DNA of 55,350 nt, the filler included, from Platydemus manokwari (Eukaryota): the NCBI GenBank assembly GCA_037951405.1. It is 5 parts of 5 records of this genome, joined end to end, with 100 filler letters (N's around TTAATTAATTAA, not from the genome) between each part and the next. Parts side by side here need not be neighbours in the genome. Positions count along the whole stretch, not along the records: positions 1 to 10,329 come from JBBMOY011144883.1; 4 more parts are not named here. One strand, 5' to 3'. Positions 1 to 9,927 of this stretch are shown here, piece after piece (within the stretch, counting starts at the first letter, position 1; every line of letters begins with the position of its first letter). The notes under the pieces were generated by a model. It did not search any database and had not been told where the DNA came from. It saw nothing but the letters and a program-made list of their open reading frames with translations. Both the position numbers and the translations under genes were made by a program.

Positions 1-549
1 TCTGACTAAACTAATTAAATTTACAAGTGAAAACAAAAGCAAATATGATTGAATAAATCAAAGATTTACGAAGTTGTTGAAACATAAACAAAAATATTTT
101 CTAATAATGACGGAGTTCGAATTTATTTTCGACGCCAAAAAATATTATTCTATCGATTAGGTTTGTTGTCGAATATCACAAAATGCATAAATTTAATTGA
201 GATAAACTAATAAATTATTATTAATGAATATTAGACGATCTTTGTTTTTACTTGATATCGCAATTGCATTTTACGATTTCTCTGATGGTTATGAAAAGAT
301 CGCAACAGCAATCATTGATAAATTAAAAACAATAATTTTTCAGTATATTTCATTACATCAGAAAAATTCATTTCGAAAGACTAGGAGTTGTATGCAAATT
401 GTATTGAATTCATCAAATCTTTTGATGAGGTGTTATTTTTTGTTAATTTCATTGATGAAACATTGACTAAATATCCATTGTGCTTATTACACAACAACTA
501 TTAACTAAGTCTTAATTTCATTGGACATTGACAGGAATAATTTTACATG

Positions 550-607
550 GTGTGTTTGATTGTGAAAATTATATAAACTCAATTTATTTCATTTGAAATC
601 ATTCGAA
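550..607 (+). promoter_or_regulatory. Conserved core promoter of microprotein copy 1 (GTGTGTTTGATTGTGAAA - TATATAAA - TCATT Inr-like)
   Basis: Same motif order and the same 31-nt TATA-to-Inr(A) spacing in all three copies. Confidence 0.7.
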
Positions 608-769
608 ATGTCTGACGAAATCATCACCGAAGTCGCTGTCACTGAAGTCTCAGTCGAACAAGTTGCTGCTGCTAAAGTCGATGAGAAGGTCGAAGTTATT
701 GCCAAGAAAGTCACTGAAGAAATCGAAGCAGCTGAAGAAGTTTCTGAATTGAAAGAAAAATCACAATAA
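608..769 (+). CDS. Acidic E/V/K/T-rich microprotein, copy 1 (53 aa: MSDEIITEVAVTEVSVEQVAAAKVDEKVEVIAKKVTEEIEAAEEVSELKEKSQ)
   Basis: ATG 608 to TAA 767-769, read manually (below the ORF-track cutoff). Two paralogs in the window keep the frame. TATATAAA at 570-577. C-ending codon bias (7/10 Val = GTC) in an AT-rich background. AATAAA overlaps the stop. Confidence 0.85.
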   Translation: MSDEIITEVAVTEVSVEQVAAAKVDEKVEVIAKKVTEEIEAAEEVSELKEKSQ

Positions 770-1539
770 ATATTTTATTAAATATAAAATTTTGAAAATT
801 TATCTTTTCTATTATTAAAATGATATTTGATTTATTCATATATCATTTATTTGTATCAGAGATTGTTAAGAAATAGAAACATGGACAATATTAAAGTTAT
901 CTTTTTGTGTTGAAAAGTTACGAATGCTTTGGAGAAAAAATTAATAAAATGTTTTAATTTTTTGAAGATTTTAAATTATGTCAGCAAATTAAAGTAGAAA
1001 TAGATACAAAATAACTGAAATAACAATAAAATTTACATAGTAAATAACATTTGTGTAATAGACAACTGATAAAATAAGTATCTCATCAAAATAAGTATAT
1101 TTAAATCGGAAGAGTTATGCCATGTAAATATATACAAGACACATGAGTTAAAAATAAGTGTATGGTTAAGAAATATAATATTTAGAATAATTAGAGTACT
1201 CGGAACGTCGAATTTATCAATGACAAAGCACTAATAATGAATGGAGAAAAAGGATCAAATATTATTTCGACAGTTGAATTTAAAGAGAAAGTAGAACGCT
1301 GACACTTTGAGTAATGCAAAATGTATATTATGAAACATATTCATAATGAACAGATAATGGTACCAGTAACAGTTCATATTCGAATAACAGAAAAATAAGA
1401 TTTGTATATAAAATTCCTAAACTAGTTTGAAAATTAAATTCTATACTGATACTGTTTACTAATACCGCATTATGTTCGATTATTTGAGATAAATTCATTG
1501 TATAAATAAAAGATATCTTCAACTTTACTTTTTAAATTT

Positions 1540-2083
1540 TTTCACAACTAATTAATCTAATAAATTCTTAATACGGTTTCGTAATTCTTTATTGTTATCA
1601 GCACTAAATATATGGTTAACTCATCATTTTATATTTCAGTAATTTCCAACACTTTCAACTTGATCGTGAATATCAATTATTTTTCATTTTCATGTCTTCC
1701 TTCGACGACGAGTATAAAATCTTTTCATTTTGTACGTGCTTTATATTTTAGAAAATATTCAAAAATCATTTAATATCGACAATAATTATTTTCTTTTCGC
1801 CATGTTGAAAATGTTTAAGTTGATCTGAAATTTCGATACAATTAGTTTGAATTTCTTGTTAGATTTGATTGTTGTCATTTCTGTGTGTTTGAGTATTTTG
1901 TTTCATAATTTTTAAACATGCGATTATGTCTCGATAATCAGAAAAATAGAGATATTGTCAATTGGATTAACTTTTAAAAATGATGACAAAATAATAATGT
2001 ACTCATAATGTACATCATTTACATATTGTGTAATACACTATTCCATTGATATGAATACAGGTTAAAATGTTCTAATTAAACAA
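1540..2083 (+). repeat. Diverged direct duplication (partner 5440-5972), downstream flank of the microprotein unit
   Basis: Colinear similarity from TCACAACTAAT to ACTATTCCATTGATATG...AATTAAACAA in both copies. Confidence 0.7.
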
Positions 2084-2089
2084 TGAATT

Positions 2090-3830
2090 TAGGTTCTGGA
2101 AGCTAGAACTGATTATATGAAATATGGAAAAAAAGTTCCTCAGTAATCTAAACAAAAATTTCTCCGTAATGATATGGAACAAAGAAAGTCTGAAAGAAAT
2201 CGATCTTACAAATAATATATTACTACAATACAATTAAAGGCAAAAGAGGCCACTGGTATTTGGATATATGCTTAATATCAGCCATAACTTTCAATTGATA
2301 AGAATAGAACGTCAAGAGAGTAAAGAAATAAGTGAGTAAGGCTATCTTCGAAAATGAATAGAAGGTCAAGAGAGTAAAACAACTAATATTCATTTTTGAT
2401 AACTGCTTGAAAGATACATTTGAGATCAGGATGTCATTAGCAGGATGACTTTATAATTGAAACAGTAGATGGAATATTTAGTAAACTCTGAACTCATTCG
2501 CTGTGTCTGCACAATTAATTCAAAAAGTAACCCATACTTGTTTAAAGCCAATGATAAAAGAGAGATGAAACTGATCTGAAACTAAAGAGACTTTTTAACC
2601 ACGCTTCAACTGATGCCTTAGAATTAGCCTAAAACCAACTGTCTACCTACAAATAAAAGACTTCAAAAAACATTTCAAGAAAAACAGAAGGAAAAAATAA
2701 AATCGTTCTGAGCGCAAAGGATCGTGTACGAGAGCATGTAAAAATTATTGGTCACTAAAAAAGTTACTAAAAAAATTTATTAAAAGTTACGATGTCTCTA
2801 TCGAAACTGTCAAACTTCTCTTAAATGCGGAGAGATGAAACAAAGCTAATCCAAATTGAAAGGGAAGTCCAGCAGGTCTGCCTAATCTCCGTGTTTTTAT
2901 TCAACATAACAAGCAATTTAATGGAAGCCTGATAATTTCGAATCACCGCATTTTTTGCCTCGCTTATTCAGAGGACAAAGTAATTATTGTGAAAATCAAA
3001 AATGAACACAAAATGATGATCAACGAAGCATCGCCTCTCGGGTTCCAACTTGGTTTCATGTTCAAATCCTTAAAATGTGAGTACTTACATAGAATAAGAG
3101 CAAGTACTAATGCGAAGTAGCTGATGTTTCACAATGAGAAATTTCCTACAATCAGTCTAGAAGAGAACTATCGCTACCTAGGAGTGAACTTCTGTTAAAA
3201 GTTACATAATACAACTGAAGGACTTTTCATCGATATCTAAACTCTAATAAAATAAACTGAAAAAATGAATTTTACTACCATGTCAGAACTTAAAGACCTT
3301 TGAGTTGTTTGTACACAACAAAGTGACCCTCTATATAAGAAATTGCTATATCACTTTTGGTAGACTATTACAGTTCAAAGTGATGATAAGAGAATATCTG
3401 AAAAAAATCCATGTCATATCAAAATTTTGCTCATAAAATTATCTCTACTCAACAAAGTCGAATGGTTGTTGTGAAAATGACGAAAGAGTATAACATGTTG
3501 TCGATCACCAATGAGTATCATCTATCAACGAGCAAACATGAAATATTTGAAATGACGGTCATAAACTCATTGTGTAAAAGTGCAGCAGTGAATAACCAAG
3601 CTGCGACAATAGTGGAAGCATTATAATAGGCCAATTCACAAATTCTATTAAATGAAAGAAGCTATATATGGTGGAATACACAAACAAATCAAAGATGCAC
3701 AAAAACTATTGAGGTAATTTTTTATGCGATCATACCAATTTAATTGGACTAATCAAATTAGAAATGAGCGTTATAACAGCTACTTGGGAGCTATTAGTTA
3801 AATGTGGTCGAAATTAGTGATTATTGATTA
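2090..3830 (+). mobile_element. Decayed non-LTR retrotransposon RT region (RLE/R2-NeSL-type)
   Basis: Ordered degenerate RT motifs with stops and frameshifts: IEREVQQVCLISVFLFNI (~GVxQGxPLSPxLFN, from 2846), CLAYSEDKVII (~LAYADD), LGFMFKSLKC (~GLxFNxxKC), YRYLGV (3169-3186). Boundaries approximate. Confidence 0.75.
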
Positions 3831-3922
3831 AATTATTGATTAAATAAGAATTGTGCTCATTACATAACAATTATTAACCAAACCTCAATTTTATTGGACA
3901 TCGATAGGAATAATTTTGTATG

Positions 3923-3980
3923 GTGTGTTTGATTGTGAAAATTATATAAACCGAATTTGTTTGATTTCAAATCATTCAAA
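3923..3980 (+). promoter_or_regulatory. Conserved core promoter of microprotein copy 2
   Basis: GTGTGTTTGATTGTGAAA, TATATAAA 3943-3950, TCATT 3972-3976. Confidence 0.7.
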
Positions 3981-4142
3981 ATGTCTGACAAAATCATCAC
4001 CGAAGTCGTTGCTACTGAAGTTTCAGTCGAACAAGTCGTTGCTGACAAAGTCGTTGAGAATGTAGAAGTAGTTGCCAAGAAACTCACTGAAAAATCCGAA
4101 ACAACTGAAGAAGTTTCTGAAGAGAAAGCAGAATCACAATAA
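3981..4142 (+). CDS. Acidic microprotein, copy 2 (53 aa: MSDKIITEVVATEVSVEQVVADKVVENVEVVAKKLTEKSETTEEVSEEKAESQ)
   Basis: True ATG at 3981; the track's 3957 start is a TTG upstream of the predicted TSS. Colinear with copies 1 and 3. TATATAAA at 3943-3950; AATAAA shortly after the stop. Confidence 0.85.
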   Translation: MSDKIITEVVATEVSVEQVVADKVVENVEVVAKKLTEKSETTEEVSEEKAESQ

Positions 4143-4254
4143 TCATTTTGATAAATAAATTTTTGAAAATTTCTCCTTGTGTTTTATTAGTAGGTTGTAT
4201 TTTTACTGAATTATTAGATTCACAATCAATCTAATCTAAATGTGAATTAATTTT

Positions 4255-6165
4255 TATATTTGCATTTTGTTAAGAAATGTTTTCGTTCAGGTTTTCCTAA
4301 ATTACTATTTCAATCAAAAAATAGATATGTGGTTCAACTTGATCCTTAATAATTATTATTTTATTTCACATCAATTATTATTAAATACAATTAAAAATAT
4401 TTTGTTGCTTTAGAATAACATTAAATTACATTTTTTCTTATATTTGCGAAATTAATTGTCCTCTTACTATAGTCACAGATATTTTTCTGGTTAAATACTG
4501 CTGTTCTTTTTACAAAATTTAAAGACGAATTTTTCTTTGATATTTTTATTTACACTTAAACCCTTCAGTAAAATCATACTGTCAGTGATCGCTGTTTAGT
4601 GAAGATAAAGGTCTTCTATAAGCTTAAATAAAAATTCAAACTATTTAAACACTTTAGAAGACTTTAGCATGTTTGAAATAAAATACTAAACACACTTGAG
4701 CTTCAAAAGGATAAAGACAATGACAAAGTTCTCTTGCTAAATTTGAGATAAGCTAGGCAATTTGTATATATCTTTTGAGAATAAATTATTTTAATTATAA
4801 TTTTAATATTTGAATCTTTTCTTATCTTAAGACCGCTTATCTTTTGTCATCACTATATTTTATCTTTCAATTAAATGAGACTTATACTATCAAAATAGAG
4901 GAAATATTAAAATTCGATAATAAATACTAAAACGTATAATCTCTTATATATTAATTTATTGAGCTACATTGAAGAACACCGAGTAGAAATTTACATTAAT
5001 ATAATTTTAAAACATGATTAATAATGGAATTTTTGTGCAATCTTTAAGCAACAATTCATTATTAATTTTAATAATAAATCAAGAACCATAATGATTTGTG
5101 TTATTATATACAGCTATTGTCATTCATTTTATTGTTTAATGTGCAATCAAAGATAAAATGTATTTAAAATTATCATATTATTTTCATAAGAATTTTATAT
5201 AATTTTGTGTATGAATCACGAGTTGCATAGCAAGCAAAACTTTAAAACAAATTCAAATTTATAAATAAAAAATAAATTTCGATATTAATAAATTAGTTTA
5301 TATTTTGATGAATAAATATGTTTACATCAGCCATAAATAAAATTATAGTTTATCAAATTTATAAAACATATACATTTAATTTGAAATTAACTTCATTTTA
5401 TAAATCAAATTTATTTTTATCTTTATTTATTTAATTTGCTTCACAACTAATGAATATAATGAATTAAGAACACAATTTAGTAGTTCTTGTGCTTATCAGT
5501 GTTTATTAGCACCTGAATCCTTCATGTTATACTTCAATATTTATTATCACTTGCAATTTGGTAGTGGCATTGGCTTTATTGAATTTTTCTTAAAATACCA
5601 GGAAATATTGTTTTTATTTTGCACATGCTTTATGTTTGAGAGAATATCGAAAAATCATTTGATATTGATCATATATATTTTATTTTTCTCCACAGTTGAA
5701 AATGTTATGGATATTTTATTCGATGCATTCCGTCTTAGATGTGATTGTTATTTCTATCTTTGAGCGTACATGTGATGAAATTCTTTATCACGGGATCATG
5801 TCTTGATATTGAGAAAAATTTGAAATTCCTTCAGCTTTTCAAAAACAGACTCTAAATAACTATTCAAAATGATGAAATAGCAATACAACATTCATAAATT
5901 ACGTCCTTTCCATATAACACAATATACTATTCCATTGATATGGATATGGGCTTTAATTTTCAAATTAAACAAATTTCATCAAATTTTATTAAATCATAAT
6001 TTATTTTTATAAACAAAATCTTATAATTATATTTAATAATAATTAATGCGAAATAAAATAATAATTATTAAGAATCAAGTTGAGCCACTATATCTATTTA
6101 TCGAATGAGAAAATAATTTAATAAAACACGAGCAAAGGTTTTTCTTGTAAAATTATATTAGTAAA
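4255..6165. repeat. Inverted repeat pair of about 170 bp (4255-4430 vs 5995-6165)
   Basis: Reverse complement of ATAGATATGTGGTTCAACTTGATCCTTAATAATTATTATTTTATTTC matches GAAATAAAATAATAATTATTAAGAATCAAGTTGAGCCACTATATCTAT. Confidence 0.75.
5440..5972 (+). repeat. Diverged direct duplication (partner 1540-2083)
   Basis: See partner; similarity ends at the same AATTAAACAA. Confidence 0.7.
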
Positions 6166-7379
6166 AATAACAGGGAGATAATTAACATTTTGCTCATCCC
6201 TGATTATAATTATCATCATTCGGTAATTAATAAAATGCTTTTGAGAATTCAGTCTCAGTTAAACGAATAATATTTAAAAATCATACTAGTTAAATGCTCA
6301 TATAAATATATGATTTTATAAATCAAAGATTACAAGATGTTGCTGAAATACATGCAAGATCATTATATAATGACAGCATAAAATTGAATTATTGAATACA
6401 TAAAGATAATCTTAAATACATTTGCCTGCTGGCTCATGTGTGAACACTGATACAATACACACAAAACCTCAATATTAAAGTTATTGGATCAAGATTCTTT
6501 TTATCAAAATATTATATTCTTGCATTTTGAATTTCATTGATCATGTCGGTATTGTAGCACACATGCTGTTTATTCTTCGCTGACATTAAAATATATTTGT
6601 ATTTCAAGCACAAAGCACAGATTATGCAAATAAGATACAAGTTATCTAATTGATGTTGATTCTATGTGCAAAAATACATGAAATAATATTGTAACTCCAA
6701 ATATGAATTATTATAATCCTTTAACGGTATTTTCATTGTTTCAGAACACATAGTTTTGATTTCTTTTCTTATTTTGCAGTATCTTTTGAATGCGTATATT
6801 CATTCTCTACATTTTGCAATGAATGGGATTACGTAGTTAAATTTGTTTTTGTCTTGATATCCTGAACTCTAGTGAGGTGGCTAATCTGACATATTCTATT
6901 GTAAAATAATCAACATAAATTGGCAGGCATTCATATAAGGTTATAGATAAATAATTTATTGATTATTTCAAATCTTTTATTAGTTAATATGGAATTCTTT
7001 TTCGCCATTGGGACGTATCAAATTGGTTGTATAAGGAAAAAATATTAGGATAAGTATAATAATATACAAACGAGGATAAATAAACGATGTGTTCGTAGAT
7101 TTTAAATCTCGTGCATGTCAGTGAAGATGAATCAATAACAGAGGCATATCAGTGCGATAAAAACACAATTATTTGGCTTAGGAACAATAATACAATAAAA
7201 TAAGAGATTATTTTAATAAACTCGCACCAACTCACCAAAAATTATTATTTGGCAATGCTGAAAATGCCTTTTAATAGATGTTGAATTTAATGATATCTGA
7301 TTATAAAATGAAATTTTAGTTCTAAATAAAAATTAACTAATATTGATAATTTTTGTTAAATTATTTCAAAAATTCATAT

Positions 7380-7790
7380 TATTGATATCACAAGAAGAAT
7401 GACAAGATTTCATGGAAAAGATCCAAAAGACAATAATAATTGCTACGAAATATCTGATTGTATTGATCGAATCTAATGATAGAAGATTTATTTTTATTAA
7501 TTTCACCGATCAAATACTAATTTGAGTACCATTTCGCTGGCTAAACAAAAATTATTAACTAAAACTGAATTTCATTGGACATTCAGAGAAATAGTTTGAT
7601 TGTGAAAATAATAAACTAAATTTATTTCAAATTATAATAAATATCAGTAGAAACAAAATATAATTTTAACAGGTAAATTAATATAATTCTTTGAACAAGG
7701 TCTTGATAAAGGCATAGTGAAATCATCAATAATTTTTTGTATAATATCTTCACGATATCATCACTTATTGTTCAGAAATTAGCAATTTTA
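7380..7790 (+). pseudogene. Decayed fourth microprotein copy (homologous upstream region, degenerate TATA, no intact ORF)
   Basis: 7430-7630 aligns by eye to the upstream regions of copies 1 and 3 (AAAAGACAATAATAATTG..., TTTCATTGGACATT, GTTTGATTGTGAAAAT). TATA is changed to AATAATAAAC. Only relic coding words (ATATCAGTAGAA, GAACAAG...GATAAAG, AAATCATCAATAA) and a copy-1-like 3' flank follow. Confidence 0.45.
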
Positions 7791-7998
7791 GACCCTTAAT
7801 TAAAAATCATGACAATGCTCAGATAATCTGGTATAATTACAAAATATGATTCAATGAAATTAAATAACGTGAGAACAATAAGAATATAAATTGATAAAGT
7901 TATAATATTATATCTATACGTCTTGAAAATATAAACTAATTTTATGAAATATAAATGCAATAAAAATAGGATTTTCAAAGATTTATTTATGAAAATAT

Positions 7999-8151
7999 TT
8001 ATTGTGATTCTTCTTTTACTTGAGAAATTTCTTCAGTTGTTTCGGCTTCTCCAGTGACTTTTTTGGCAACTACTTCAACGGCTTTGGCAACATCAACTTG
8101 TTCGACTGAGATTTCAGTAGCAGCAACTTCAGTGATGATTTCGTCAGACAT
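7999..8151 (-). CDS. Acidic microprotein, copy 3, inverted (50 aa: MSDEIITEVAATEISVEQVDVAKAVEVVAKKVTGEAETTEEISQVKEESQ)
   Basis: Reverse-strand ATG at 8151, TAA at 7999-8001. In-frame 9-nt deletion relative to copies 1 and 2. TATATAAA at 8182-8189 (minus). Confidence 0.85.
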   Translation of the reverse strand: MSDEIITEVAATEISVEQVDVAKAVEVVAKKVTGEAETTEEISQVKEESQ

Positions 8152-8209
8152 TTTGAATGATTCCGAATAAAATACATTTGGTTTATATAAATTTCACAAT
8201 CAAACACAC
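8152..8209 (-). promoter_or_regulatory. Conserved core promoter of microprotein copy 3
   Basis: Reverse complement carries GTGTGTTTGATTGTGAAA, TATATAAA (8182-8189) and TCATT (8156-8160). Confidence 0.7.
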
Positions 8210-8539
8210 TATGTAATTATTTCTAACAATCTCCAATAAAATTGATGTTTAGATCGTGCCTGTTATGTAATAAGCACAAATGTCAGTTTAATCTAAATTG
8301 TTTCATCAGTCAAATCAATAAATGTAAAGCACCAAAGCATATATTTGGATTTATTCAATCTGATTTGCGTAACAATTATTATTGTCTTTTCAATATTTTT
8401 AATGCTGCTATTAAAAATAATATTTATATATTATTATTAGAGATAGAATTTATAAAAAACAAAAAGCTACACAAAAATTAATATTTCTGAAAATTGACCC
8501 TATATTTTTTATGATATTTAATTGTAATGTCAAAAATAT

Positions 8540-9927
8540 ATAATTTCATTACACAAGTTTAATTAAGAGTTAGTTTTGCATAAATCAGAAGTTGGTATTA
8601 ATAATATTTTAAATCTAATATGATACTAATTAAAATTTAATGAAATATATTTTGTGATGTGCGGATTATAATTAAAAATGAATAGAAACTAATACCTTTC
8701 GAACTCAAAATATATATTTGTTCTTTTAGATCTAATTAATTAAAAAATAAATTACCGACATTTTCGGGTGATGCATGGTAAATATTTGAATTGCAATCGA
8801 TAAGGTATGGTTAAAAGTCTTAATGCTTTTGGATGTAATGTCGACACCGACTGCTCACCAACTGAGGTGACGGCTTCTTTATGACCTCGCTTAATAATCC
8901 AAACTTCAGATAGTAAAAACATGAAAATCGATATATTCCTGTTATATGTTAAGGTGCCACTTGATAAGTAAAATTTTAGGAATAACTTGAAGAGAAGCTA
9001 CATAAAGTATAAAGACCTGGCAATTCAAGTCGCTAGGAAAAGCAGAACTTAAGTGAGTGTGCATGTGTTAAACGAAGGTTCTTTAGTGTCATGAGATCTA
9101 CATAATTTTGGAGTCTTGATACTAATGGGGTTTTATAGTAAGAATTCAAATGAGTTGGCTTTTCTTCTTGTTTTTACTTCTAGAATCATATATGTTATAT
9201 CGACCTCATGTATCTTTGGAGGATAGACCTCCAATAAGCAACCCCACCTTATGTCTAACACGCATTATCGCATGAAATGACAGCTTGTGCGTTCGTAAAG
9301 AAACACCGGTATAGGTATTTCTATTTATGTTATTTATAAGGTGTATTTGAGAGACAGTATAGTCTTCTACACCTTTTTATAGTGTTTGATGTAATATCAT
9401 GAAAGAGTGTATTTATCGTGCTTTGTAAGTTCATCTCGTAATGAAGAAAACTGTGTTAAAAATAATCTATAAGATAGAAAATTAATCATATTTTTACATT
9501 TATTTTTATATCAGAGAAAATTTGTCAAAAGTTTGGTTTTGTCATTATTTGTTATTCTTAAAGGTTTCAGCACAAATTTTAATAAACTACCTGATGACTG
9601 CGAAACTACAATTGAGAATTTTGAAGTGTGTTCAGAGCGAACTAATAAGTTTCTTTGCTATTGGCGTTTGATTTAAATAAAATGAATTGTACAGCGAAAA
9701 ATTATTTCACACTGACTACTACACAAGTTTTATTACAAAATAGATTAACATTAATCAGAAGTTTCAATTAAAAATGATTTGATTCTAAAATGAGACTAAT
9801 CAAAATTCAATAAAATTTTGTGATGTGGAGATTATAATAAATGAGCATGAAAGATTTTCTCTTTACATCTAACAATATATTTCTATTTTTCAGATATAAG
9901 TCGTAATTTATTAAAAAAAATAAATTA
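8540..9927 (+). repeat. Diverged direct repeat pair of about 215 bp (8540-8755 vs 9715-9927) bracketing the RLE fragment
   Basis: Shared ACACAAGTTT..AATCAGAAGTT..TTTTGTGATGTG..GATTATAAT..TAAATTA. Confidence 0.6.
8760..9470 (+). mobile_element. Decayed restriction-like endonuclease (RLE) C-terminus and 3' region of a non-LTR retrotransposon
   Basis: Frame from 8921 reads IDIFLLYVKVPLD...IKYKDLA...VSVHVLNEGSLVS*DLHNFGVLILMG...SRIIY, matching the RLE pattern DVxVP...KxxKYxxL...GSLGSW...N..vL..lG...SRxIY, with in-frame stops. Confidence 0.7.

What the first reader, a model, noticed from the sequence alone, without database searches (positions are those of the whole stretch)
550..8210. Hidden cluster of three acidic 50-53 aa microprotein genes, two invisible to the ORF track
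Seen: three paralogous intronless ORFs (two +, one -) start MSD(E/K)IITEV and end SQ*. All lack F, W, Y, C, P, H and R. Copy 1 has 13 Glu, 2 Asp, 6 Lys and 10 Val. The N-terminus shows 5-residue periodicity (IITEV-AVTEV-SVEQV). The only indel is in-frame (9 nt) while the flanks are much more diverged, and codons are C-ending biased in an AT-rich genome. Inference: a conserved, highly expressed, non-secreted disordered peptide family amplified for dosage. MSD suggests N-acetylation. Resemblance to prothymosin/LEA-like proteins is compositional only. Standard annotation would probably miss these genes.
Basis: partly seen in the sequence, partly recalled or inferred. Interest (0 to 1): 0.78.

Follow-up and report, generated by a model that had tools for sequence, protein, structure and literature searches.

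The report
Amplified acidic microprotein gene family
The three tiny acidic genes are real and belong to a family of at least 60 intact, selectively maintained copies in what is most likely a planarian flatworm genome; the family has no known relatives, its function is unknown and its expression could not be tested.

Summary
Three intronless ORFs (608-769 +, 3981-4142 +, 7999-8151 -) encode 53, 53 and 50 aa proteins that start MSD(E/K)IITEV and end ESQ. They are a small sample of a family. The window's own assembly has 69 matches, about 60 of them without stops and mostly exactly 53 aa. The copies sit 1.2-3.4 kb apart in both orientations. Each copy is a compact unit of about 350 nt: inverted CCAAT box, GT-rich block, TATATAAA 38 nt before the ATG, an initiator-like ATCATTC, the CDS, then AATAAA. 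Coding is well supported. All indels are in frame, codon positions vary 3>1>2, and dN/dS is about 0.39. CDS identity (87%) exceeds distal-flank identity (74%) in 36 of 38 paralogue pairs. Intactness is about 80-87%, against about 15% expected under neutral drift. A full HMMER search of 1.84 billion proteins found one relative, on a metagenome contig with the same promoter motifs. Pfam, PDB, the ESM Atlas and a beta-thymosin profile comparison gave nothing. Mitochondrial evidence points to a triclad flatworm, in an assembly that also holds snail and arthropod DNA. Expression and function remain untested. An abundant intracellular polyanion is only a guess.

The parts
487..607 (+). Copy 1 conserved promoter and leader: TTACACAA 487-494, inverted CCAAT (ATTGG) 520-524, GT block 550-567, TATATAAA 570-577, initiator-like ATCATTC 598-604
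   Evidence: Motif positions. Conservation across 36 family members is 0.8-0.99 per column from about -100 to -1. There is no AG between the TATA box and the ATG, so no splice acceptor.
608..769 (+). Copy 1 CDS, 53 aa plus TAA
770..805 (+). Copy 1 conserved 3' stretch with a poly(A)-signal-like motif (AATAAA overlapping the stop at 765-770; ATATAAAA 782-789; TTTTGAAAATTT)
3860..3980 (+). Copy 2 promoter and leader: TTACATAA 3860-3867, ATTGG 3893-3897, GT block 3923-3940, TATATAAA 3943-3950, ATCATTC 3971-3977
3981..4142 (+). Copy 2 CDS, 53 aa plus TAA
4143..4180 (+). Copy 2 conserved 3' stretch with AATAAA at 4154-4159
7999..8151 (-). Copy 3 CDS, 50 aa plus TAA; 9-nt in-frame deletion relative to copies 1 and 2
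8152..8270 (-). Copy 3 promoter and leader: ATCATTC 8155-8161, TATATAAA 8182-8189, GT block 8192-8209, ATTGG 8233-8237, TTACATAA 8263-8270
7965..7998 (-). Copy 3 conserved 3' stretch with AATAAA at 7982-7987
1531..2083 (+). Intergenic segment repeated at 5430-5972 (74-76% identity). It shows that copies 1 and 2 lie in a tandem segmental duplication of about 3.4-3.9 kb.
6772..7929 (-). Downstream flank of copy 3, 74% identical over 1183 nt to the flank of its closest paralogue on another contig (L009). The two CDSs are 93.5% identical.

Best explanation
SHOWN: each of the three ORFs is a complete, independently promoted, intronless gene for a 5.8-kDa protein with pI about 4 and net charge about -10. 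They belong to a lineage-restricted family of at least 60 intact genes that grew by tandem and inverted segmental duplication. The promoter (about 130 nt), the CDS and a short 3' end are kept by purifying selection while the intergenic DNA decays. INFERRED: the genes are transcribed from a TATA box plus an initiator-like element, which would give an unusually short leader of about 7 nt. The protein has no signal peptide, so it stays inside the cell. Its initiator Met is probably removed and Ser2 acetylated. It has an N-terminal block of four xxTEV-type pentads and a C-terminal amphipathic acidic segment rich in casein kinase 2 (CK2)-like Thr/Ser-Glu sites. GUESS (about 0.3 on its own): it acts stoichiometrically as an abundant soluble polyanion, a buffer or chaperone for basic partners or cations in the manner of prothymosin or Hero proteins. 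That would explain why so many copies with one shared promoter are kept. The host is most likely a triclad flatworm.
For: Family size and intactness: 62 matches with one protein, 60 of them without stops. With a profile there are 69 matches, about 60 full length and open. Among 54 distinct ORFs, 38 are exactly 53 aa.

Conserved unit: it runs from about -130 to +195 relative to the ATG, and the flanks are at background.

Selection: Nei-Gojobori (NG) dN/dS has a median of 0.39, and 0.30-0.43 in all three thirds of the CDS. Pairwise difference by codon position is 0.199 / 0.128 / 0.248. CDS identity is 86.8% and promoter identity 85.8%, against 73.9% for distal flanks; the CDS exceeds the flank in 36 of 38 pairs. 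A neutral simulation at the observed divergence leaves only about 15% of copies intact.

Duplication mode: intergenic homology exists between clusters and within the window.

Cross-sample relative: P0001 (49 aa, E = 1.2e-12) lies on a metagenome contig that keeps the ATTGG, TATATAAAC and poly(A)-signal blocks.

Protein properties: pI 4.05, charge -10, period-5 signal in the N-terminal half, helical amphipathic signal (105 degrees, z = 2.5) in the C-terminal half. AlphaFold2 predicts a single helix at pLDDT 77.

Host: the COX1 type that uses AAA = Asn and ATA = Ile is flanked trnF-cox1-trnE. PMC12870015 places trnF between nad4 and cox1 in the ancestral triclad gene order. All degenerate nuclear COX1 copies in AT-rich contigs derive from this type.
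Against: There are no RNA, ribosome or peptide data: the only run found is DNA-like. Gene conversion could add to the homogeneity of the promoter and the CDS ends, since synonymous diversity is lowest in codons 2-9 and 46-53. A leader of about 7 nt is unusual for an animal mRNA, and the start site is only inferred. The pairwise statistics use related copies and are not independent. Assigning the contigs to the flatworm rests on base composition and on the nuclear mitochondrial copies, not on physical linkage to a flatworm marker gene. The biochemical role has no direct support.
Confidence: 0.72

Rival explanations
1. The unit is a dispersed repeat, such as a transposable element, a gene fragment captured by one, or a satellite. 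On this view the ORF is carried passively and does not serve the host.
For: There are many copies in both orientations in AT-rich, gene-poor DNA. Other repeats lie between the genes.
Against: The shared unit is only about 350 nt and consists of a promoter, an ORF and a poly(A) signal. It has no terminal inverted or long terminal repeats and no transposase or reverse-transcriptase ORF nearby. Neighbouring intergenic DNA is homologous between paralogue pairs, which fits segmental duplication rather than insertion. The ORFs are kept open far beyond the neutral expectation.
Confidence: 0.07
2. It is a non-coding RNA gene or a cis-regulatory module, and its open frame is incidental.
For: Nucleotide conservation is very high at the first 27 nt, including synonymous sites. 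An antisense ORF is also open in copies 1 and 2.
Against: Length variants are all in frame, at 49-57 aa. Variability by codon position is 3>1>2 and dN/dS is 0.3-0.4 everywhere. The start and stop codons are conserved. There is no Rfam match. The TATA box and the poly(A) signal are both oriented with the sense frame.
Confidence: 0.05
3. It is a very divergent beta-thymosin/WH2-type actin-monomer binder: MSD start, a KKVTEETE segment reminiscent of LKKTET or LKKV, and an acidic ...ES(Q) end.
For: The evidence is resemblance read from the sequences and recall of thymosin beta-4. hhalign did pair the NVEVVSKKV segment with the helix-plus-KK region of a thymosin repeat from the same genome.
Against: That hhalign match has probability 1.1%. 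Pfam Thymosin and WH2 give no hit at E <= 10. The Thymosin HMM finds canonical multi-repeat thymosins elsewhere in this genome but none of the family's contigs. The hydrophobic residue before KK is usually Ser or Ala, and the spacing differs.
Confidence: 0.06
4. The contigs belong to another AT-rich eukaryote in the mixed sample, such as a parasite, a symbiont or prey, and not to the flatworm.
For: The assembly holds at least four animal mitochondrial types. No family contig carries a marker gene.
Against: The family contigs have the same 25-28% GC as the long contigs that carry flatworm-derived nuclear mitochondrial copies, and as the contigs with intronless metazoan actins. Depth of the window's unique parts is even, at about 10-20.
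Confidence: 0.1

Closest known systems
Prothymosin alpha / parathymosin (vertebrate acidic nuclear disordered proteins)
   Same: It has an MSD/MSE start that predicts an acetylated Ser N-terminus. It is strongly acidic, has no aromatic or Cys residues and no signal peptide. A role as a polyanionic partner of basic proteins is plausible.
   Different: Pfam gives no hit to any family at E <= 10 apart from three sub-threshold chance matches for copy 2, and there is no PDB or profile hit. It is half the size and Val/Thr-rich (20% Val), not Asp/Glu/Gly-rich. It is present as at least 60 genes, not as one gene with processed pseudogenes. The resemblance is compositional only.
Beta-thymosin / WH2 repeat (PF01290)
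   Same: It is similar in size to a beta-thymosin (about 40-55 aa), has an MSD start, a central KK followed by T/E residues, and an acidic tail.
   Different: It fails the HMM and the profile-profile test, and the LKKTET motif is not present as such.
Lineage-specific heat-soluble or 'Hero'-type charged proteins (tardigrade CAHS/SAHS, LEA proteins, human Hero proteins)
   Same: It is taxonomically restricted, highly charged and of low complexity, is predicted to be a helix or disordered, and exists in multiple copies.
   Different: There is no sequence relation. It is much shorter (53 aa), has strictly conserved termini, and its copy number is far larger. No stress link is known.
Tandemly amplified, co-regulated small gene arrays (for example histone clusters)
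   Same: The genes are many, compact and intronless, lie a few kb apart in both orientations, and share one conserved promoter. That pattern suggests a demand for bulk product.
   Different: Copies differ by 25-45% in protein sequence rather than being homogenised. There is a poly(A) signal rather than a histone stem-loop (one search finds no Rfam element).

Membership tests
Beta-thymosin (Pfam PF01290) / WH2 | Significant match to the Thymosin or WH2 profile | tested here: not met
   Pfam scan of the three proteins at E <= 10 gives no such hit. The PF01290 search of the own genome finds 13 places, none on a family contig.
Beta-thymosin (Pfam PF01290) / WH2 | Profile-profile similarity to a canonical thymosin repeat of the same genome | tested here: not met
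   hhalign of A3 against L079:986-1300:- gives probability 1.1% over 18 columns.
Beta-thymosin (Pfam PF01290) / WH2 | LKKTET or LKKV motif preceded by an amphipathic helix with a Leu/Ile triad | tested here: not met
   The family consensus is VV[SA]KKVTEETE. The residue before KK is Ser or Ala in about 90% of members.
Beta-thymosin (Pfam PF01290) / WH2 | Binds G-actin | not testable with these tools
   This needs a biochemical assay or a complex prediction.
Prothymosin / parathymosin | Match to the Pfam prothymosin/parathymosin profile; long Asp/Glu run; C-terminal basic nuclear localisation signal | tested here: not met
   No Pfam hit. There is no poly-D/E run and no basic cluster apart from KK.
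LEA / dehydrin-type proteins | Match to any LEA or dehydrin Pfam profile (11-mer repeats or K-segment) | tested here: not met
   No Pfam hit. The periodicity found is 5 residues, not 11.
Transposable element | Terminal repeats, target-site duplications, or a transposase or reverse-transcriptase ORF within the repeated unit | tested here: not met
   The conserved unit is about 350 nt with no terminal repeats. The family contigs have no ORF of 120 aa or more, and the longest ORFs (90-117 aa) are low-complexity, antisense to a family gene or read into one. These ORFs were not scanned against Pfam.
Bona fide protein-coding gene (general criteria) | Open frame maintained, in-frame indels only, dN/dS below 1, CDS more conserved than neutral flanks | tested here: met
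Bona fide protein-coding gene (general criteria) | Transcribed and translated | not testable with these tools
   The single run search returned one DNA-like run and no RNA run.

The most novel reading that the evidence does not exclude
This is a flatworm-specific family of 60 or more genes for an N-acetylated polyanionic microprotein that is made in bulk in one cell type and acts stoichiometrically on a basic or cationic target (histones or other chromatin proteins, actin, or Ca2+). That would make it an independently evolved functional analogue of the vertebrate thymosins or prothymosin. It would also have an unusual near-leaderless mRNA, with a leader of about 7 nt driven by a TATA box plus an initiator.
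Probability: 0.12. Interest if true: 0.7.

Novelty: new variant of a known kind. Interest (0 to 1): 0.45.

Why it matters
If expressed, this is one of the largest microprotein gene families seen in an animal genome. It would be missed by standard annotation, because the ORFs are under 60 aa, have no introns and have no homologues. It gives a clean case for studying how an orphan gene is amplified together with its promoter and kept under selection. In a planarian it would be an easy target for RNAi, because the first 27 nt are almost invariant across the copies aligned here (about 96% per column). The conserved 130-nt promoter is also a ready-made, compact candidate driver for flatworm transgenesis. 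Without expression data it remains a well-supported prediction and not a discovery about function.

Tried and rejected
1. The Pfam scan gave only three sub-threshold chance hits for copy 2 (TMP_N, ROS_MUCR, dynein stalk), which I rejected.
2. The word-indexed protein search found no candidate.
3. The ESM Atlas features search gave a best score of 0.77, below any useful level.
4. An exact look-up of copy 1 in public assemblies found nothing on record.
5. A PDB profile search found nothing at E <= 10. Foldseek of the single-helix model found nothing, and a lone helix is uninformative anyway.
6. A scan of JGI metagenome contigs gave 232 pattern matches, none confirmed.
7. Literature searches for the peptide string and for planarian acidic or small-ORF families found nothing relevant.
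8. The beta-thymosin idea was tested and rejected as family membership.
9. A GATA site in the promoter is only about 70-80% conserved in the family and is degenerate in all three window copies, so I do not claim it.
10. Ciliate-type stop-codon reassignment was considered because the genome is AT-rich. I rejected it because the sequence after TAA loses frame and conservation between copies.
Laying its contigs showed multi-copy depth over the CDS but cannot show expression.
No low-expression gene set could be fetched as a codon-usage baseline.
Full report
**1. Observation**

- Copy 1 lies at 608-769 on the + strand.
- Copy 2 lies at 3981-4142 on the + strand.
- Copy 3 lies at 7999-8151 on the - strand.

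They encode 53, 53 and 50 aa. All start MSD(E/K)IITEV and end ESQ, and copies 2 and 3 are 70-72% identical to copy 1.

The DNA alignment shows that similarity is not confined to the ORF. About 130 nt upstream and about 40 nt downstream are also conserved, and alignment collapses beyond that. The only CDS indel among the three is 9 nt and in frame.

The 5-residue periodicity is measurable. In 38 family members the hydrophobic moment of residues 3-27 peaks at 75 degrees, a period of about 4.8 residues, with z = 3.3 against shuffles. Residues 24-53 peak at 105 degrees (z = 2.5), the value for an amphipathic alpha-helix.

**2. The three genes are a sample of a large family**

Searching the window's own assembly (911 Mb in about 2 million contigs) with copy 1 gave 62 places, 60 of them without an internal stop. 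A profile of 50 members gave 69 places. About 60 are full length and open; the rest are fragments or carry one or two stops.

I extracted 54 distinct ORFs, and 38 of them are exactly 53 aa. The length variants (49, 50, 52, 54 and 57 aa) are all in frame.

Contigs with more than one copy show spacings of 1.2-3.4 kb in both orientations. Contig depth summed over the CDS in the one run that holds the window is about 70 times that of unique flanks. This is a rough figure and the tool warns that it is not a copy number. It is still consistent with several dozen copies.

**3. Anatomy of the unit**

An alignment of 36 copies with 400-nt flanks shows background conservation (0.4-0.55) outside about -230 to +195. 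Conservation is 0.8-0.99 from about -100 to the stop and about 35 nt beyond it. The blocks, given here for copy 1, are:
- TTACA(C/T)AA at 487-494, which is less conserved across the family;
- an inverted CCAAT box (ATTGG) at 520-524, nearly invariant;
- a GT-rich block, GTGTGTTTGATTGTGAAA, at 550-567;
- TATATAAA at 570-577, invariant;
- ATCATTC at 598-604;
- the ATG at 608.

If the A of ATCATTC is the start site, the TATA box begins at -31, which is the classical TATA-to-initiator spacing. The leader would then be only about 7 nt long. This is inference.

There is no AG between the TATA box and the ATG in any of the three copies, so a splice or trans-splice acceptor there is excluded by direct reading. 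After the TAA stop comes a conserved TTTTGATAAATAAATTTTTGAAAATTT stretch that holds AATAAA.

No Rfam family, tRNA or long tandem repeat lies in the window.

**4. Coding and selection**

- Mean pairwise difference by codon position is 0.199, 0.128 and 0.248.
- Nei-Gojobori dN/dS has a median of 0.39 over 703 pairs. It is 0.30, 0.43 and 0.40 in codons 1-19, 20-39 and 40-53. The variable centre is therefore not under detectable diversifying selection.
- For 38 paralogue pairs whose distal flanks can still be aligned, CDS identity averages 86.8% and the -130..-1 promoter 85.8%. The distal flanks average 73.9%, a figure biased upward because it comes from local alignments. The CDS exceeds the flank in 36 of 38 pairs.
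- About 40% of the codons (GAA, AAA, CAA, TCA) are one mutation away from a stop. A neutral simulation at the observed 12.4% divergence from the consensus leaves only about 15% of copies intact, even when indels are ignored. About 80-87% are intact.

The copies are related, so these are not independent trials. The direction and size of the effect are still clear.

One caveat remains. Synonymous diversity is lowest in codons 2-9 and 46-53, next to the conserved promoter and 3' end. Gene conversion or RNA-level constraint may therefore add to the conservation at the ends.

**5. How the family grew**

With the gene units masked, intergenic DNA of the window still matches other family contigs. For example, 6772-7929 matches L009 at 74% over 1183 nt. 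Within the window, 1531-2083 matches 5430-5972 at 74-76%. The family therefore spread by segmental duplication, tandem and inverted, and not by insertion of a discrete element.

The family contigs have no reading frame (stop to stop) of 120 aa or more. The longest, at 90-117 aa, are low-complexity, antisense to a family gene or read into one.

**6. Relatives and known families**

- Pfam gave nothing meaningful.
- The word-indexed search found no candidate.
- The ESM Atlas gave a best score of 0.77.
- The PDB profile search found nothing at E <= 10.
- The exhaustive HMMER search of 1.84 billion cluster representatives returned one protein, P0001 (49 aa, E = 1.2e-12).

P0001 is encoded on a 501-nt contig of an ENA metagenome assembly. 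Its upstream DNA keeps the ATTGG, TATATAAAC and poly(A)-signal blocks, so it is a true orthologue or paralogue from the same or a close species. JGI metagenomes gave nothing. Three literature searches found no description of the family.

I followed one lead of my own, a resemblance to beta-thymosin or WH2 repeats (MSD start, KKVTEETE, acidic end). The Thymosin HMM finds canonical multi-repeat thymosins in this genome but no family member. hhalign of the family profile against one of those repeats gives 1.1% probability. Membership is rejected. A functional analogy cannot be tested here.

**7. Protein properties**

- Median mass is 5.8 kDa, pI is 4.05 and net charge is -10.
- Composition is E 24%, V 20%, T 10%, K 9%, S 9%, A 8% and I 6%.
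- Residues M1, S2, D3 and V9 are invariant. I5, I6, E8, E13, V14, E17, Q18, E29, K33, K34, E40, V45, E47, K49, E51, S52 and Q53 are at least 90% conserved.
- AlphaFold2 with the 50-sequence alignment gives one helix over residues 3-52, at mean pLDDT 76.6 and pTM 0.35. For a short charged sequence this does not distinguish a stable helix from a disordered chain with helical propensity.
- There is no hydrophobic N-terminus, so no signal peptide. This is read directly from the sequence.

By general knowledge, Met-Ser N-termini lose the Met and are acetylated by NatA. This is inference.

**8. Codon usage**

The family uses ATC, GAC, GTC and ACC more often than three intronless actin genes of the same AT-rich genome. 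Overall GC3 is 27%, like actin at 25-32%. Much of the excess comes from the first nine codons, which all copies inherited. It is weak evidence for high expression.

**9. Whose genome this is**

The assembly is mixed and holds four COX1 types.
- Two sit on complete 14.2 and 14.8 kb mitogenomes. From memory, their gene order is that of heterobranch gastropods.
- One looks arthropod-like.
- The fourth uses AAA where the others have conserved Asn (3 of 3 sites) and ATA where they have Ile (8 of 9 sites). This is the echinoderm/flatworm code 9.

The fourth type is flanked trnF-cox1-trnE. A 2026 mitogenome paper states that trnF lies between nad4 and cox1 in the ancestral triclad gene order (PMC12870015).

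Sixteen further COX1-like fragments were compared with the four types. Fifteen, most of them degenerate and several lying in contigs of 10-15 kb with 25-33% GC, are closest to this flatworm type. The sixteenth is snail-like.

The AT-rich fraction also carries intronless metazoan actins. The window (25% GC) therefore most likely belongs to a triclad flatworm. The snail and arthropod DNA may be prey or co-sampled animals. Physical linkage of a family contig to a flatworm marker gene was not obtained.

**10. Expression**

Expression was not testable. Its contigs confirm that the locus exists and is multi-copy, but they say nothing about transcripts.

**11. Verdict**

This is a real, selectively maintained, lineage-restricted family of at least 60 compact microprotein genes with a shared promoter. 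It understates the scale, and it overstates what is known about expression and disorder. Function is open. My best guess, at about 0.3, is a bulk intracellular polyanion that buffers or chaperones basic partners. The finding is a new protein family of a familiar general kind (an amplified orphan gene for a charged small protein). It is interesting mainly for its copy number and its invisibility to annotation.

Noticed in passing
G000 contigs C1389203 (L055+L057) and C1514745 (L056+L058): There are two different complete mitogenomes, 14.8 kb at 33% GC and 14.2 kb at 25% GC, with 87% COX1 amino-acid identity. Their gene order is the heterobranch-gastropod type, so the assembly holds DNA of two snails or slugs besides the main organism.
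   Followed up: partly
G000 contigs C1344449 (L053) and C1440324 (L054): C1344449 carries an arthropod-like COX1. C1440324 carries a flatworm COX1 that uses genetic code 9 (AAA = Asn, ATA = Ile) and is flanked trnF-cox1-trnE. The main AT-rich genome appears to be the flatworm's.
   Followed up: yes
L059-L067 and L069-L074 (15 of the 16 fragments compared; for example C1120441:9111-9974, C545552:8946-9537, C236672:3977-4417): Many degenerate COX1 copies lie in AT-rich contigs of 2-15 kb. They are 65-81% identical to the flatworm COX1 and several carry stop codons. This suggests an unusually rich set of old nuclear mitochondrial insertions.
   Followed up: partly
window 2133-3542 and 3684-3965: Summed contig depth in run X1 is 50-470, against about 13 in unique parts. 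GC is also higher here (30-33%). Dispersed repeats of unknown type lie between copies 1 and 2.
   Followed up: no
window 4329-4396 and 6021-6088: This is an inverted repeat, 68 nt and 91% complementary, with 1624 nt between the arms. Both arms also match the locus L010. It may mark a small non-autonomous element or an inverted duplication just downstream of copy 2.
   Followed up: no
window 8550-8754 and 9720-9927: This direct repeat (71-77% identity) also occurs upstream of family genes on other contigs (L003, L009, L014, L019, L020). It is a second conserved or repeated intergenic element that travels with the family.
   Followed up: no
window 589-714 (-) and 3860-4087 (-): Ser/Thr-rich ORFs are open antisense to copies 1 and 2. 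They are open because GAA, GTC and ACT codons have no stop in reverse complement. Codon-position statistics and the orientation of the TATA box and poly(A) signal argue against their use.
   Followed up: partly
G000 C1272962:986-1936 (-) and C781092:2102-4863 (-) (L076-L080): Canonical multi-repeat beta-thymosin genes are present in the same assembly.
   Followed up: partly
G000 C1123997, C1124552, C1784950 (dynein heavy chain hits); L082-L084 (actins): Open frames of 882-1880 aa in dynein genes and intronless full-length actins suggest that this genome is intron-poor, at least in these genes.
   Followed up: no
family CDS codons 2-9 and 46-53: Synonymous diversity is 0.13-0.16 at the ends of the CDS against 0.32 in the middle. 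This hints at gene conversion or RNA-level constraint next to the promoter and the 3' end.
   Followed up: partly
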